DNA of 37,823 bases from Salpingoeca rosetta. Its lineage: Eukaryota > Protista > Choanoflagellata. The translations under genes and the position numbers were made by a program. Each line of letters starts with the position of its first letter. The first letter of the stretch is position 1. The notes below the pieces were generated by a model. The model worked only from the letters and a program-made list of their open reading frames with translations. It did no database searches and was not told where the DNA came from. Shown one piece after another: positions 32,692 through 37,823 of this stretch. The DNA is taken from positions 725,401-763,223 of the forward strand of contig JAWQFM010000032.1 in assembly GCA_033442325.1 (NCBI GenBank), given 5' to 3'.

Positions 32692-32881
32692 TAAATGGGG
32701 GAAGTGTGGGGTTGCAGGTGAGCTGTGTCATTAACACACGCACGAATGCAACACATACACACGCAACGNNNNNNNNNNNNNNNNNNNNNNNNNNNNNNNN
32801 NNNNNNNNNNNNNNNNNNNNNNNNNNNNNNNNNNNNNNNNNNNNNNNNNNNNNNNNNNNNNNNNNNNNTTCACACACACAT

Positions 32882-32932
<51 letters not shown>

Positions 32933-34058
32933 CCTGCTGCACGAGTGAGCGGAGAGAGGTAAACTCGGGCTGCTCCGGCAGGTTGAGGACCACGTCCTCG
33001 GCCAGCACCTCCAAGGTGCCGTCCACCACGGCCATTTCGGGCACAACTACACCAAGCACCGAGTATTCACATCACGTGCATACGTTGTACGCGCGGCAAT
33101 GGCAAAGCGAAAGCACAAGTGAGTGTGATGATGAGAGGGACGAGCCAGCCACACCCAAGCACCAGCGGCTGAAACACCACCCATACCCAAGTACCAGCGA
33201 TACTGCGGCTACATGCAGTGCCAAACTCACAGCAGCCGTTGCCTTCGTGGTCTGCGGTGCCAGCAAAGCCCGGTTTGCAGCGGCAGATGAAGTCCAGGCC
33301 ATTTGCAGTCTCCTCACACAGCTGCTCCCCGCATGGAGATCCAGCGCACATGTCCACATCTGTGTGTGCGTGTGTGGATGGATGGGAGGGTGAGGAAGGG
33401 ATTTAAACGTAAGATGTGAGGGGGGCGGGATGGAGAGTGAATTAAAGGGGCAATATGCGTCGAAGAAAGCGCCCACCTTGACAGGACTGTCCTGACACAA
33501 CCGGCTCGAGCGTGCCGTCAGCTGTGCACTGTACGTCGTACGAGTCTGCATCACCTGCGATAAGAATGAAGCGATGCGGATGAGTGGCGGGTGAGTGGGT
33601 GAGTGGGTGAGTGGGTAAGCAAGCATCAAAACCCACGCACACAACACAGACACACAGACACAGACACACACAGACACACACAGACACACACAGACACACA
33701 CAGACACACCGGAAGCACGGGTGCCAGGGTTGCAGGAGAAGGTCACGGTGTCGCCAAAGAAGAGCTCAGAAGTGGACTCCGGGTTGGCGTTGGACGTGGG
33801 TTGCGGTGTGCCGCAGGAAACAGGGAAGCAGGTCGTGGATTGGTTCGACGCCGCGTACCCATCAAAGCAGCTACCGCAATCACCAGACCCAGCACCGGCG
33901 CCACTGCACGCGTTTCGGTTGAGCTCCACACAAGATGAAGCGGCGCCAAGCGCCACACACGCCGCACTGTCTCCGGCCGCGCTCACCACAGCCACCTGCG
34001 CTGGTGCAACCACCACCAGCACACACAACAACAACAACCAGCGAACAACAAGCCGCAT
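29288..34058 (-). CDS. Secreted protein: signal peptide, Cys-rich/EGF-like, Sushi(CCP), EGF, coiled coil, fibrinogen-related domain
   Basis: Signal peptide MRLVVRWLLLLCVLVVVAPA. Cys-rich CVELNRNAC...CGSCFDGY. CCP-like VSCGTP...FGDTVTFSCNPG...VQCTADGT. EGF DVDMCAGSPCGEQLCEETANGLDFICRCKPGFAG. Heptad segments LSTALETEVTTARDNE, GLAGDLNDLSGRVDNV and EVQALRDELSQLK. Fibrinogen-like PKSCLDVKNINPSAQSGIYEIRPAG...VYCDMETDGGGWT. The likely last exon is ANDWAGAPDKEGYIYFR* (stop 29288-29290); an alternative stop lies at 30005. Confidence 0.82.
30934..31373. other. Assembly gap (440 N) inside an intron of the fibrinogen-like gene
   Basis: Run of N. The flanking exons (…GIYEI c | gg cct gcc…) splice in frame across it. 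Confidence 1.
32769..32868. other. Assembly gap (100 N), intronic
   Basis: Run of N. Confidence 1.
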
Positions 34059-34131
34059 CTTGCTTGCTTCTTGCTTGCTGCCCCCAACACACACAAAACT
34101 GAATTCAGTGTGGAAGCAAAGCCGCACAACC

Positions 34132-34244
<113 letters not shown>

Positions 34245-34327: not shown

Positions 34328-34476
34328 ACAACAACAGCAACAACAACAACAACAGCAACAACAACAACAAACAACAACAACAACAACAACAAACAACAAC
34401 AACAACAACAACTTAAACAACAACAACAACAACAACTTAAACAACAACAACAACAACTTAAACAACAACAACAACA
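34328..34476. repeat. (CAA)n tract with interspersed ACTTAA units, intergenic or UTR
   Basis: Direct reading of the sequence. Confidence 0.9.
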
Positions 34477-34640
34477 GAGCAGTGGAACACAAGCGAGCGT
34501 CAAGGAAGCCACAACTGGCGTGCGTGTAACAGAACAGTGGGTGATGAACGAAATGTAATAACTGCACCACCGTGACAGGACTGGAGGAGAAAACAGAAGC
34601 CGGAGGAGAAAGGAGCTGCCACGGGGCAGGTGACCAAGAG

Positions 34641-35936
34641 CTAATACGCTGAGGCTGCGTCCACATCGCACTTCTTGGCCTCTCGCACCAGCTTCATGGC
34701 GGGACCCATTGACACACCGGAGGACCGAAGCGTCTGCTTTGTCAAGTCGCCCTCATGTACGAGAGCCACCAGCACCTCCAGGCTGTCAATGCCGTGCTCC
34801 ACCAACGCGGCTTCGACGTGCGACAGCAGCGAGTGGCGGTTGAGCCATTGAATGAGCTCTGGCTCGAATGGTGATGAGGATGAGGGCGATGGGGTGGTGG
34901 ACGGTGGGGTGAAAGTAGTCATGACGGTGGAGGACGAGGAAGATGACTGCAGGGCAGGTAAACAAGAGGATGGGTAACACATTGTGAGCACGAGTGGAAG
35001 GAGCGGTCATGTGCACACACACACACGCACAGCAGATGCACACACACACACACACGCACAAGCACACACAAGCATACACAAAATACCATACCTGCGTGGA
35101 ACGACGTGCTGTGTCTGCTTCTTGCGTTGTTTGCTCCTCACTCCTGGCAGAGGAGACAACCTGGCGCACCTTCTCCGCGATGTCGCGCAGCTGCGACGTG
35201 CGGTCCACAGCGGCGTCCAATGCAACCACGGCGTCAATGTCAAAGAGCGACAGTACCACTTGACGCACGCTCTTGTGCCGCTGTGGCGGTGGCAAGTGTA
35301 GCACCTGCGTGAAATACTGGTCCAGGGCTGATGTCGTCTCCTTGCTCACAGCATCTGGCAGCGTCATCGCCAGCCGCTTCAGGCGGTCAAACGAGTCGTA
35401 TTCGCTCACTTCGGCCCTGCTCATACTGCTGTCGTTCACATTGTGCCACGCGCTGCCAACAATCACGGGCACGACACGTCGAAGGCGAATCCTGGCATGT
35501 TGCTGCTCCTCGTCTGCCGAATGCGCCCCCTGGTGCTCGTGCAGTGCCAGCATCGTCATCCACTCCAGCAGCACGTTGTCGCAGTAGTCGCTGTGCTGCA
35601 GCTGCCTCATCTGCATGATGGTGGCAGCAGAAACAATGGGGCAGGCCACCAGGCTCAGCCCAATCGCCGTCATGAACGACAGCTTGAAGTTGAGGCCCGT
35701 CTCCAGGTTGTTGGCGTCCAGGAACGCAACCAGGTTGCGCTGCTCCAAGCGCGGATGCAGCGCCATCACCAGCCCACTGCTGGCGCGTTGCCTGTGATGT
35801 GTAGGGGAGGGAGAAGGGTGTGTGTGAGGTGAAGTGTTGGGCAGCAGTAGTGGTGGGTGGAAGTGACGGACACGTAAACAAGTCATGGGCACACAGACAC
35901 ACGCTTGCACACGCTCACACGCACACACTTGCACAC

Positions 35937-35970
<34 letters not shown>

Positions 35971-37565
35971 CTCACCTGTAGCTGATGAAGACGTCGTACT
36001 TGTCCTGGAGGCCGAGAACGGGCAGAAGAGGGCCATATTTGGCGACCAGGTCATCGGGTGACAGCAGCTGCTCGTCCACCCACATGTCCTGCTTGCTCTT
36101 GTGGTGGTGCAGCACGTCCTCAAAGAACAACAGTGTCTTGTCGTCAAATGGCACCAGCAGGCTGCTCTTCAGCTCAGGATAGCGCTCTCTGGCGGCCTCG
36201 CTAATCATCTTGTGCAGCATATGCAGCATGGCGCGTGGCTGCGCACTCGTGATCTTCATCTTGATGCCGCCAACAGCCGGCACAAGCTGCAACTCAAGCT
36301 TGGTCGACTCCATGAAGCAGATGGCGTGGGTGCGACTCAGCTTGGGTTTTTGCGATGCGCCGTGCTGGGCGTGCGCCATCACATGCGCTAACACAACCGT
36401 AAACAGCCCCTCTGGCAGGAAAGACGCATGCTGTGCATGCTCAGCTCTCACGCTCGCTTCTGTCTTGAACTCCTTCAGGCTGAAGGCGACGTAGGCCGTC
36501 TTCTCCTCGTGTCCAAGATATGGATTGACCTGCTGTGCTGCTGTCGTGCTCAGAGTGACAGATTCCATCGTGCTGCTGCTGTGGCGGATCGTCATCGGCA
36601 GGATGGCTGGGACCAGGTATTGCTGCTGCTGGTGCTGCTGGCGTTGGTGTGCGTCATTGCCCTTGCTCACACCATCGTTGTCACCGTGGCCGGAGTTGGC
36701 GTGGGCGAGCGCTCTGCGGCTATCCACCAGCTTGGGTGGAGAGTATTGAATGCACAGCCCATATTGCATCATGAGGCGCAGGAACGGGTCAACCAAGTTG
36801 CTGTCCACGTCTCTCCACAACACCTCCAGCAGACGACGGTGCAGGATGCCGCGGTCGACAAGGTCGTCCCACACGTCGGCGCCAAGTGCCCGCACCTCCG
36901 GCCCCTGCACATCGTCGTCGTGCAGGCCAAACGTGCGGATGACGCGCGTCATCGTGTCCACCGCCCACTGCGGGCTCAGGATCACATAGGCGTCCATGCC
37001 AGGCACGCTGTCGTAGTACAGCACCATTGAGTACAGGTGCAGGAACTGGAGGCAGGCTCTCGTCTCCTGGCGTGTGCGCAGCCCACACGTGCGCGCAATC
37101 GCCACCACCTCATCAAACGTGAGCAGCGGTCGCTTCTCGTCGCGGGCGATGGCGTTGAGCTTGTCGTAGAGGTGGAGGTACGGCACAGCCACCTCCTGGC
37201 TCACGTACTCCTGCGCCAGCGCGGTGGAGGAGATGGTCTGGCGCAGGTCCTGGATCATGGGGTCGCCGATGGACTTGGTGTTGTCGACGGGCCAGAACCA
37301 CAGCTTGTGCTTGCTGTTGTACACAACAGAAGCGAAGGCCGGGTTGTGGCGCAGGCGGCTGTGGATGTCACGCGAGATCTGCTCATGTTGCTTCCGCTGA
37401 CTGACCACATCAGCGAAGGTGCCGACGATGAGGACGGGCGCGCCTTTTGCATGGAGGTGGAGGGAGGAGAGCCAGTGCTCCATAAACTCCCACGCCTCGG
37501 TCCGCTTGCTCTCGTCTTGGTGCAGCAGGTCCTCCATGGAGAACACCAGCAGGTACACTGCGTAC
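34641..37565 (-). CDS. Roco-family protein, 3' part: C-terminal half of Roc GTPase, COR, TIR, SAM (5' end outside the window or unresolved)
   Basis: Exons 35976-37565, 35092-35791 and 34641-34946 splice in frame. Roc: YAVYLLVFSM...HWLSSLHLHAKGAPVLIVGTFAD...WPVDNT...IQDLRQTI. COR: VPYLHL..L, LQFLHLYSMVLYY, VILSPQW, GILHRRLLEVLW, YLVPAILP, LPEGLF. TIR: YDVFISYR...AFLDANNLETG...PIVS...DNVLLEWMTML...VVPVIVG. SAM: ELIQWLNRHSLLSHVEAALVEHGIDSLEVL...LRSSGVSMGPAMKLVRE. Confidence 0.88.
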
Positions 37566-37649
37566 CTGTTGTGGGGAGGTTGGGAGGTAAAGGGTGGGGA
37601 TGTGAGAAGGGTGGTGGTGGGGGGGGGGGGTGACAGCACGTAGCCCACA

Positions 37650-37744
<95 letters not shown>

Positions 37745-37823
37745 AGCACGCATGCACCCCCCACCCCGGTGGCTCCGCACAAAAAACACAAGAGTGCTCC
37801 CTTTTGTGTGGGGGAAAAAGGGG

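What the first reader, a model, noticed from the sequence alone, without database searches (positions are those of the whole stretch)
34641..37565. Roc-COR-TIR-SAM fusion: a candidate GTPase-gated TIR NADase / innate-immune-like receptor in a unicellular eukaryote
Seen in sequence: three in-frame GT-AG exons join a Roco Roc-COR module directly to a TIR domain and then to a SAM domain. Established knowledge: Roco proteins (LRRK2, DAPK1, Dictyostelium Rocos) switch oligomeric state through Roc-COR and usually carry a kinase or death-domain effector. SARM1 uses SAM-driven oligomerisation to activate TIR NAD+ hydrolysis. Inference: here the kinase position is occupied by a TIR enzyme with its own SAM oligomeriser, in the reverse order to SARM1 (TIR before SAM). 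This could be a nucleotide-regulated NAD+-depleting or signalling-molecule-producing defence or cell-death switch. COR-TIR fusions exist in prokaryotes, but I do not recall this four-domain architecture being characterised in a eukaryote. The N-terminal sensor region lies beyond the window.
Basis: partly seen in the sequence, partly recalled or inferred. Interest (0 to 1): 0.85.

Follow-up and report, generated by a model that had tools for sequence, protein, structure and literature searches.

The report
Choanoflagellate Roco GTPase with TIR-SAM output
This is the 3' part of a real, expressed Salpingoeca rosetta gene (PTSG_09991) that joins a Roc-COR GTPase switch to a TIR enzyme domain and a SAM domain. 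It is one of at least 35 similar genes, and the TIR of a sister copy has already been shown to make the signalling molecule cADPR.

Summary
On the minus strand, three GT-AG exons (37565-35976, 35791-35092, 34946-34641) encode the C-terminal half of Roc, then COR-A, COR-B, TIR, a Ser/Thr/Pro linker and SAM. This matches NCBI model PTSG_09991 of Salpingoeca rosetta. RNA reads confirm the TIR-to-SAM splice and show that exon A is joined to an upstream Roc switch-II exon. The TIR fold (Foldseek: plant NLR and SARM1 TIRs) and the SAM fold (VIA-align: top hits all SAM domains) are supported, and the catalytic Glu (E642) is present.

The N-terminal part lies in a 7,326-N scaffold gap. Exon 1 beyond the gap matches full-length paralogues built LRR-ANK-Roc-COR-TIR-SAM.

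The gene is not unique. The genome has 35 COR-TIR loci, 24 of them with SAM, and relatives occur in at least five other choanoflagellate genera. A 2026 preprint showed that the TIR of paralogue PTSG_12359 (65% identical) makes cADPR in E. coli, dependent on that Glu, with no NAD+ depletion recorded.

My reading is a GTPase-switched, NLR-analogous receptor family with a signal-producing TIR. Immune function is untested.

This scan flagged the same family on other pieces of this genome. Novelty: new member of a known kind. Interest: moderate.

The parts
37283..37564 (-). C-terminal half of the Roc GTPase domain (P0151 residues 37-130; G4-like motif GTFAD at residue 84). Base 37565 is the third base of a codon split by the upstream intron.
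   Evidence: Aligns to Pfam Roc/Ras matches of the paralogues. RNA loose ends at 37565 join it to '...FHPFFLTE'.
36725..37180 (-). COR-A domain (residues 165-316)
   Evidence: Pfam PF16095, E 4e-18, 64-66 bits against a cut-off of 35.3.
36137..36433 (-). COR-B domain (residues 414-512), sub-threshold match
   Evidence: Pfam PF25497, E 0.002-0.004, 17.5-18.6 bits against a cut-off of 27. The same weak match is seen in the paralogues.
35976..36001 (-). First strand of the TIR domain (KYDVFISY-R) at the end of exon A. The donor is AG|GTGAGT.
   Evidence: Profile alignment to SARM1 'DVFISYRR'.
35792..35975 (-). Intron between exons A and B (GT..AG, contains a CA repeat)
   Evidence: Zero RNA depth in bin 35858-35963. 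The joint itself was not reported by the tool.
35389..35791 (-). TIR core (residues 566-700). The catalytic Glu E642 is codon GAG at 35565-35563, in the motif CDNVLLEW.
   Evidence: Equivalent to E1118 of the assayed paralogue.
35092..35388 (-). Conserved helical extension after the TIR core (residues 701-799)
   Evidence: AF2 helices with pLDDT about 90. Column identity 0.72 among paralogues. Included in the construct assayed for the paralogue.
34947..35091 (-). Intron between exons B and C
   Evidence: RNA joint 34946->35092 (CT..AC on the + strand, which is GT..AG on the minus strand), 35 reads in two runs.
34869..34946 (-). Ser/Thr/Pro-rich disordered linker (residues 800-825)
   Evidence: pLDDT below 50. 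Variable among paralogues.
34659..34868 (-). SAM domain (residues 826-895)
   Evidence: AF2 five-helix bundle with pLDDT above 90. VIA-align top matches are all SAM domains, Z 7.8-5.3. Pfam SAM_2 matches 13 of 20 paralogues.
34641..34643 (-). Stop codon TAG
34480..34640 (-). At least part of the 3' UTR
   Evidence: Strand-biased RNA depth of 5-11.

Best explanation
PTSG_09991 is a functional member of a choanoflagellate family of cytosolic Roco proteins. The family architecture is RI-type LRR, ANK, Roc GTPase, COR-A/B, TIR, linker and SAM.

Proposed mechanism:
1. The variable LRR/ANK N-terminus senses a ligand or a perturbation.
2. The Roc-COR module acts as the nucleotide-dependent dimerisation or conformational switch, as in other Roco proteins.
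3. Switching brings the TIR domains together. TIR enzymes need self-association to form their active site.
4. E642 then catalyses conversion of NAD+ into cADPR-type products, which act mainly as a signal rather than by bulk NAD+ depletion.
5. The C-terminal SAM adds homotypic assembly or recruits partners.

Shown here: the gene structure, its expression, the TIR and SAM folds, the catalytic Glu, purifying selection, and the size and distribution of the family. Shown by others, for a paralogue TIR only: cADPR production that depends on the catalytic Glu. Inferred: GTPase gating, the role of SAM, and a sensing or defence function.
For: - Gene model and expression: splice sites and reading frame; identity to the NCBI model; RNA joints and strand bias.
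- TIR: the family profile hits SARM1 TIR best, E 2e-6. The AF2 model (pLDDT 80) matches RUN1, RPV1, SNC1, RPP1 and L6 TIRs at E about 1e-5 with TMt 0.64-0.75, and also SARM1 TIR.
- Catalytic Glu: the E in NVLLEW is present in 24 of 26 aligned family TIRs. This copy is 65% identical to the TIR of PTSG_12359 (UniProt F2UB80, residues 1034-1255, catalytic E1118). That TIR is listed as active and cADPR-producing in Table S4 of bioRxiv 10.64898/2026.04.20.719644.
- SAM.
- GTPase motifs: G1 GxGRAGKT, G3 DLGGQ and G4 GT[FH]AD are intact in 17 of 18 full-length paralogues.
- Selection: dN/dS against the two closest paralogues is 0.08-0.11 (Roc-COR exon), 0.15-0.16 (TIR exon) and 0.39 (SAM exon).
- Receptor-like family pattern: 35 COR-TIR loci. 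The LRR and N-terminus are variable (column identity about 0.55) while the Roc C-terminal half and COR-A are conserved (0.83-0.86) and the TIR core is at 0.75. Some paralogues carry other C-terminal modules: PNP_UDP_1, or a weak PARP-like match.
- Conservation: Roc-COR-TIR proteins occur in S. infusionum, Barroeca monosierra, Mylnosiga fluctuans and Didymoeca costata. Roc-COR-TIR-SAM occurs in B. monosierra and in two further EukProt transcriptomes.
Against: - No activity has been measured for this copy. The assay was on an isolated paralogue TIR in E. coli, and it is reported in a preprint.
- Pfam TIR_2 (22.4 bits against 28) and SAM_2 (16.2 against 20.5) are below the cut-offs for this copy.
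- The LRR, ANK and P-loop exons of this gene lie in an unassembled 7.3-kb gap, so its own sensor and G1/G3 motifs are unseen.
- Many RNA reads on the conserved TIR stretch come from paralogues: mixed bases and loose ends at 35530/35540. Locus-specific expression is therefore low and only partly resolved.
- There is no evidence yet that GTP binding regulates the TIR, that the SAM self-associates, or that the family responds to microbes or viruses.
Confidence: 0.55

Rival explanations
1. It is a SARM1-like executioner. On activation the TIR depletes NAD+ and kills or arrests the cell (abortive-infection-type cell death), with SAM driving a large oligomer.
For: SARM1 TIR is the best sequence match among solved structures. 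SARM1 SAM domains are among the structural matches. The catalytic Glu is retained.
Against: In Table S4 of the preprint the paralogue TIR is marked for cADPR but not for NAD+ depletion. The text says most tested TIRs did not deplete NAD+ even after overnight expression. This protein has a single SAM after the TIR, not a tandem SAM ring before it, and no ARM autoinhibitory domain.
Confidence: 0.15
2. The TIR and SAM act mainly as protein-protein adaptors. They assemble signalling complexes for non-immune cues such as bacterial cues for development, mating or feeding, and catalysis is incidental.
For: Animal TIR and SAM domains often act as scaffolds (established knowledge). Some paralogues end in CaaX-like motifs, which suggests membrane signalling.
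Against: The catalytic Glu and the surrounding motif are nearly invariant across the family. The paralogue TIR is catalytically active in a Glu-dependent manner.
Confidence: 0.15
3. This particular locus is a non-functional or mis-assembled copy, and the mapped RNA comes from paralogues.
For: A 7,326-N gap lies inside the gene. The closest paralogues are 94-95% identical in exon A. Many mixed positions are seen in the mapped reads.
Against: All three exons have open frames. dN/dS is 0.08-0.39. The B/C junction reads match at 98% or better over a region where the closest paralogues (C26, C4) are only about 78% identical in the SAM exon. Exon 1 beyond the gap is intact and matches the paralogue N-termini.
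Confidence: 0.08

Closest known systems
S. rosetta paralogue PTSG_12359 (UniProt F2UB80; P0164), whose TIR was assayed in bioRxiv 10.64898/2026.04.20.719644
   Same: Same family and architecture: LRR-ANK-Roc-COR-TIR-SAM. The TIR is 65% identical, with the same CDNVLLEW catalytic motif.
   Different: It is a different locus. The window copy is 35% divergent in the TIR and has a more divergent SAM and linker. Its own N-terminal half is unassembled and its activity is untested.
SARM1 / TIR-1 (ARM-SAM-SAM-TIR NAD+ hydrolase)
   Same: A TIR with catalytic Glu; SARM1 is the best sequence-level match among solved structures. SAM and TIR are combined in one polypeptide.
   Different: The order is reversed (TIR then SAM). 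There is one SAM rather than a tandem pair. There is no ARM NMN/NAD+ sensor. Roc-COR and LRR/ANK lie upstream. It is not an orthologue; choanoflagellates have separate SARM1 homologues (10.1101/211789).
Roco proteins (LRRK2, DAPK1, Dictyostelium Rocos, C. tepidum Roco)
   Same: A Roc GTPase immediately followed by COR-A and COR-B. ANK and LRR repeats lie N-terminal, and there is a weak ANK_LRRK2 match in paralogues.
   Different: There is no kinase, death or WD40 domain; the output module is TIR-SAM. The LRRs are of the ribonuclease-inhibitor type (LRR_6) and precede the ANK repeats. There is a large low-complexity insert inside Roc.
Plant TNL and other NLR immune receptors
   Same: Same logic: LRR sensor, NTPase switch and TIR enzyme. 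The predicted TIR is structurally closest to plant NLR TIRs. The family is expanded, with a variable sensor and a conserved core.
   Different: The switch is a Roc-COR GTPase, not a STAND NB-ARC/NACHT ATPase. The domain order differs. This is an analogy, not homology of the switch.
Prokaryotic Roc-COR or TIR conflict-system proteins
   Same: The logic would be comparable.
   Different: This was not verified here. A pattern scan of one genome for each of 185,579 prokaryotic species found no relative of this TIR-SAM module, which is a weak negative. The two Aravind-group papers I checked mention Roc-COR/Roco only in their reference lists.

Membership tests
Roco (Roc-COR) proteins | COR domain (COR-A plus COR-B) directly C-terminal to Roc | tested here: met
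   COR-A E 4e-18, above the gathering cut-off. COR-B is a weak match in the right place. The exon A protein retrieves 1,424 proteins at E<=0.001; every retrieved protein scanned with Pfam carries Roc and/or COR-A.
Roco (Roc-COR) proteins | Roc GTPase with G1 P-loop, G3 DxxG and G4 motifs | tested here: inconclusive
   The window holds only the post-switch-II half, with the G4-like GTFAD motif. RNA reads join it to the exon that follows DLGGQ in paralogues. G1 and G3 of this copy lie in the scaffold gap. They are intact in 17 of 18 paralogues.
Catalytic TIR domains (NADase/cyclase class) | TIR fold | tested here: met
   Foldseek matches RUN1, RPV1, SNC1, RPP1, L6 and SARM1 TIRs, probability 1.00, TMt up to 0.75. 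The profile matches SARM1 TIR at E 2e-6. Pfam TIR_2 for this copy is 22.4 bits, below the cut-off of 28; paralogue P0164 scores 33.3.
Catalytic TIR domains (NADase/cyclase class) | Conserved catalytic glutamate | tested here: met
   E642 (codon 35565-35563) aligns with E1118 of the assayed paralogue.
Catalytic TIR domains (NADase/cyclase class) | NAD+-consuming activity | not testable with these tools
   Shown only for the paralogue TIR in E. coli: cADPR produced, abolished by mutation of the Glu (preprint).
SAM domain | Five-helix SAM fold | tested here: met
   AF2 pLDDT 88. In the VIA-align search of the whole representative set, the top roughly 28 hits are SAM domains (p73 Z 7.8 with rmsd 2.0 over 61 residues; SARM1 SAM Z 6.6 and 6.3). 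Pfam SAM_2 scores 16.2 bits for this copy, below the cut-off of 20.5; 13 of 20 paralogues match, best E 3e-8.
SAM domain | Homotypic oligomerisation | not testable with these tools
   No measurement is available. It needs SEC-MALS or an equivalent experiment.
SARM1 orthologues | ARM domain plus tandem SAM domains N-terminal to the TIR | tested here: not met
   No ARM domain; a single SAM C-terminal to the TIR; Roc-COR upstream.
NLR / STAND receptors | NACHT or NB-ARC STAND NTPase | tested here: not met
   Pfam finds only Roc/Ras-type GTPase and COR domains in full-length paralogues. The resemblance is functional only.

The most novel reading that the evidence does not exclude
Choanoflagellates, which lack NLRs, use a Roco-based receptor repertoire as their NLR analogue. 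S. rosetta has at least 35 LRR/ANK-Roc-COR-TIR genes, enriched near contig ends, and the family is present across the choanoflagellate genera sampled. Activated receptors would make cADPR or ADPR through the TIR, and this could feed the ADPR-gated TRPM2 channel-enzyme already characterised in S. rosetta. That would give a pre-animal NAD+-to-Ca2+ danger-signalling pathway.
Probability: 0.15. Interest if true: 0.85.

Novelty: new member of a known kind. Interest (0 to 1): 0.5.

Why it matters
Choanoflagellates are the closest living relatives of animals and were reported to lack NLRs (10.1101/211789).

This family has a variable sensor, a conserved GTPase switch and a catalytically competent TIR. 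It is a plausible stand-in for NLR/TNL-type receptors. It would show that the logic of LRR sensor, NTPase switch and TIR enzyme arose again on a Roco scaffold.

S. rosetta is genetically tractable. One paralogue TIR is already known to make cADPR, and an ADPR-gated TRPM2 channel is characterised in the same organism (PMC6461439). The GTPase-to-TIR coupling and its downstream readout are therefore directly testable.

For this particular gene the finding is one more member of that family rather than a singular discovery.

Tried and rejected
1. Upstream DNA fetch. Fetching the upstream DNA from the genome gave only N. The public assembly has the same 7,326-N scaffold gap, so the LRR-ANK-Roc exons of this copy could not be read.
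2. A/B intron in reads. Read laying did not report the A/B intron joint, because it skipped the CA repeat at 35902-35977. Support for that intron is indirect.
3. Foldseek on the isolated SAM model. It gave no significant match, best E 1.6, although CASKIN2 and EphA7 SAM appeared at low rmsd. VIA-align was needed.
4. Complex prediction with two copies of the SAM (residues 820-900). It returned 'no answer' (score 0.00, controls not run). This is not evidence for or against self-association.
5. Prokaryotic scan. A pattern scan of prokaryotic genomes with the TIR-SAM alignment found no relative. This is a weak negative and does not exclude bacterial Roc-COR-TIR proteins.
6. Literature searches. 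Searches for the locus tags and for choanoflagellate plus Roc/COR/TIR/expansion found nothing beyond the 2026 preprint and Richter et al.. Two Aravind-group papers mention Roc-COR/Roco only in their references.
7. Transposon or pseudogene origin of the many copies. Rejected: dN/dS is 0.08-0.39, the frames are open, the copies have conserved intron positions, and the annotated paralogues are full length.
8. The NCBI model's direct join of exon 1 ('...IANNT') to exon A. Rejected as an artefact of the gap. Paralogues continue '...IANNTCG...' into the LRRs, and RNA joins exon A to a Roc exon.
Full report
**Observation**

The feature lies on the minus strand. Reading the sequence and checking the junctions gives three exons:
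- Exon A, 37565..35976: acceptor AACAG|G, donor AG|GTGAGT.
- Exon B, 35791..35092: donor CAG|GTATGG.
- Exon C, 34946..34641: acceptor CTGCAG|, stop TAG.

The exons join in frame to 864 aa. That sequence equals residues 37-900 of NCBI protein PTSG_09991 of Salpingoeca rosetta (P0151, 900 aa). The window is G000:C32:725401-763223 of a 55.4-Mb genome in 68 contigs.

**Expression and splicing**

I laid three stranded RNA-seq runs (raw reads) and one set of Logan contigs on 34480-37640 at 98% identity or better.
- Coverage is almost entirely on one strand.
- The joint 34946->35092 (CT..AC on the + strand, so GT..AG on the minus strand) is seen in 4 reads (X21) and 31 reads (X22). The TIR exon is therefore spliced to the SAM exon in one transcript.
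- Reads ending at 37565 continue into sequence that translates, joined to exon A, as Y[I/V]FHPFFLT[E/K]-YAVYLLV. In paralogues this is the Roc exon that follows G3 DLGGQ.
- The A/B joint was not reported, because the tool masked the CA repeat at 35902-35977. Depth is zero in the intron bin, and all annotated paralogues and transcriptome-derived homologues have the TIR continuous across this point.
- Mixed bases and loose ends at 35530/35540 show that many reads on the most conserved TIR stretch come from paralogues. Locus-specific expression is low (depth roughly 5-20).

**Domains**

- Pfam on the pieces and on P0151 gives COR-A at E 4e-18 to 1e-17 (above the cut-off). COR-B (17.5-18.6 bits), TIR_2 (22.4 bits against a cut-off of 28) and SAM_2 (16.2 against 20.5) are all below their cut-offs.
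- A profile of 26 family TIR-SAM regions (alignment A1) hits SARM1 TIR best among solved structures (E 2e-6), followed by Roq1, L6, AbTIR and others.
- The AF2 model of residues 552-900 (pLDDT 80) matches plant NLR TIR domains (RUN1, RPV1, SNC1, RPP1, L6; E 1e-5 to 1e-4, TMt 0.64-0.75) and SARM1 TIR.
- The catalytic Glu is E642, codon 35565-35563, in the motif CDNVLLEW.
- The C-terminal 86 residues fold as a five-helix bundle (pLDDT 88). Foldseek gave nothing significant for it. VIA-align against 48,161 representative chains returned SAM domains in essentially all of the top 28 places: p73 Z 7.8, Tric1 7.3, SHIP2 7.2, EphA1 6.9, SARM1 SAM 6.6 and 6.3, tankyrase 6.4.
- Pfam SAM_2 matches 13 of 20 paralogue tails, best E 3e-8.

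Roc (C-terminal half), COR, TIR and SAM are therefore all really there.

**The missing N-terminus**

Beyond the window the genome reads N for 7,326 bases. The public assembly (GCA_000188695.1, GL832986.1) has the same gap inside the annotated gene.

Exon 1 on the far side (MSGGEKRARREVEALLAQTKLKDGVKNKIRAIANNT) is 88-93% identical to the N-termini of full-length paralogues P0154 and P0155. Those continue into LRR_6 repeats, ANK repeats and the Roc P-loop.

The NCBI model's direct join of exon 1 to exon A is thus an artefact of the gap. The true gene almost certainly encodes LRR-ANK-Roc-COR-TIR-SAM.

**Family**

- Exon A DNA has 57 matches in the genome, at up to 95% identity. The TIR exon has 46 matches and the SAM exon 33.
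- Pairing 43 of the TIR-exon matches with neighbouring matches gives 35 with a COR exon upstream, 27 with SAM downstream, and 24 with both.
- At least 22 annotated S. rosetta proteins of 1,245-1,557 aa cover 93-100% of the TIR-SAM region.
- Among 18 full-length paralogues, G1 GxGRAGKT, G3 DLGGQ and G4 GT[FH]AD are intact in 17.
- Column identity is highest in the Roc C-terminal half (0.86), COR-A (0.83) and the TIR core (0.75). It is lowest in the LRR (0.55), the Roc insert (0.48) and SAM (0.46).
- dN/dS of this copy against its two closest paralogues is 0.08-0.11 (Roc-COR exon), 0.15-0.16 (TIR exon) and 0.39 (SAM exon). These are constrained protein-coding genes, not decaying repeats.
- Some relatives carry other C-terminal modules: PNP_UDP_1 in P0002, a weak PARP-like match after the TIR in P0001, and SH2 before the TIR in Didymoeca costata.
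- Named sources include Salpingoeca infusionum, Barroeca monosierra, Mylnosiga fluctuans, Didymoeca costata and other EukProt transcriptomes. Roc-COR-TIR-SAM is seen in B. monosierra P0179 and in P0013 and P0017.

**What is already known**

[quoted passage not shown] No entry for NAD+ depletion is present in that row.

The ordered sequence sits at 1034-1255 of P0164 (PTSG_12359), and E1118 is the E of NVLLEW. This TIR is 65% identical to the window's TIR.

The text states that activity depended on the catalytic Glu in all cases and that most tested TIRs did not deplete NAD+. The Figure 3 legend lists LRR, Roc and COR among the drawn domains. It does not list SAM or ankyrin, and the text does not discuss GTPase regulation.

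Richter et al. (10.1101/211789) noted varied intracellular TIR architectures in choanoflagellates and the absence of NLRs, but not Roc-COR-TIR. I found no paper that describes the family, its size or its distribution.

**Mechanism**

The best-supported reading is a Roco-type switch protein whose output is a catalytic TIR.
- By analogy with Roco proteins, Roc-COR provides nucleotide-dependent dimerisation or conformational change (established knowledge).
- TIR enzymes require self-association to form the active site (established knowledge for SARM1, plant TNLs and bacterial TIRs).
- Sensor-triggered, GTPase-controlled assembly would therefore switch on cADPR production.
- The SAM could add polymerisation or partner recruitment. 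This is inference only.
- The family pattern (variable LRR, conserved core, many paralogues, alternative effector modules) resembles immune receptor repertoires.
- A speculative downstream target is the ADPR-gated TRPM2 chanzyme characterised in S. rosetta (PMC6461439).

Rivals are a SARM1-like NAD+-depleting executioner, an adaptor-only role, and a defective locus.

**Verdict**

However, the gene is not unique, and it is not uncharacterised at the level of the TIR domain.

The gene is a new member of a known kind. The family-level picture (35 or more loci, presence in every choanoflagellate genus with a named source here, and a Roco scaffold in an NLR-like role) is the more interesting result and is still unpublished as far as I could find. 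Other first-stage notes and one follow-up in this scan flagged the same family on other pieces of this genome.

Noticed in passing
Genome-wide (G000); this gene is about 28 kb from the end of contig C32: The COR-TIR loci are enriched near contig ends. 13 of 35 lie within 60 kb of an end, against at most 14.7% expected (binomial P about 9e-4). This could reflect a subtelomeric location, or assemblies breaking at repeated family members.
   Followed up: partly
Paralogues P0162, P0168, P0174 (C-termini): Some family members end in CaaX-like motifs (CALM, CLLM, CVIA) after the SAM region, suggesting prenylation and membrane anchoring. The window copy ends in ...DAASAY and lacks such a motif.
   Followed up: no
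Paralogues P0001 (PTSG_11903) and P0002 (PTSG_02681): These carry alternative C-terminal modules on the same Roc-COR scaffold. P0001 has a TIR followed by about 600 aa with a weak PARP catalytic match (E 0.026). P0002 has PNP_UDP_1 (28.5 bits, above the cut-off).
   Followed up: partly
P0170 (S. rosetta 'GTPase', 1,557 aa) and P0019 (Didymoeca costata): These are variant architectures. P0170 has an extra small-GTPase domain (Pfam Arf family; Rab/Arf-like) at the N-terminus of an ANK-Roc-COR-TIR-SAM protein. P0019 has an SH2 domain between COR and TIR.
   Followed up: no
window 34120-34240, 34330-34470, 35900-35975, 37640-37745: Long (GT)n/(CA)n microsatellites fill the introns and flanks, and a (CAA)n tract lies just 3' of the gene. 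The (CA)n at 35902-35977 stopped the read tool from reporting the A/B splice.
   Followed up: no
window 33072-34127 (minus strand) and the N run near 32760-32870: The next gene downstream has Cys-rich exons that look like sushi or EGF modules. The public annotation calls a 560-aa product with a weak Fibrinogen_C hit, followed by a retinoblastoma-family gene (RB_A, RB_B). A short N gap lies in the window near 32.8 kb.
   Followed up: no
C32:763224-770549 (just beyond the window end): A 7,326-N scaffold gap lies inside PTSG_09991. As a result the public protein model (900 aa) skips the LRR-ANK-Roc exons and is annotated only as 'COR domain-containing protein'.
   Followed up: yes
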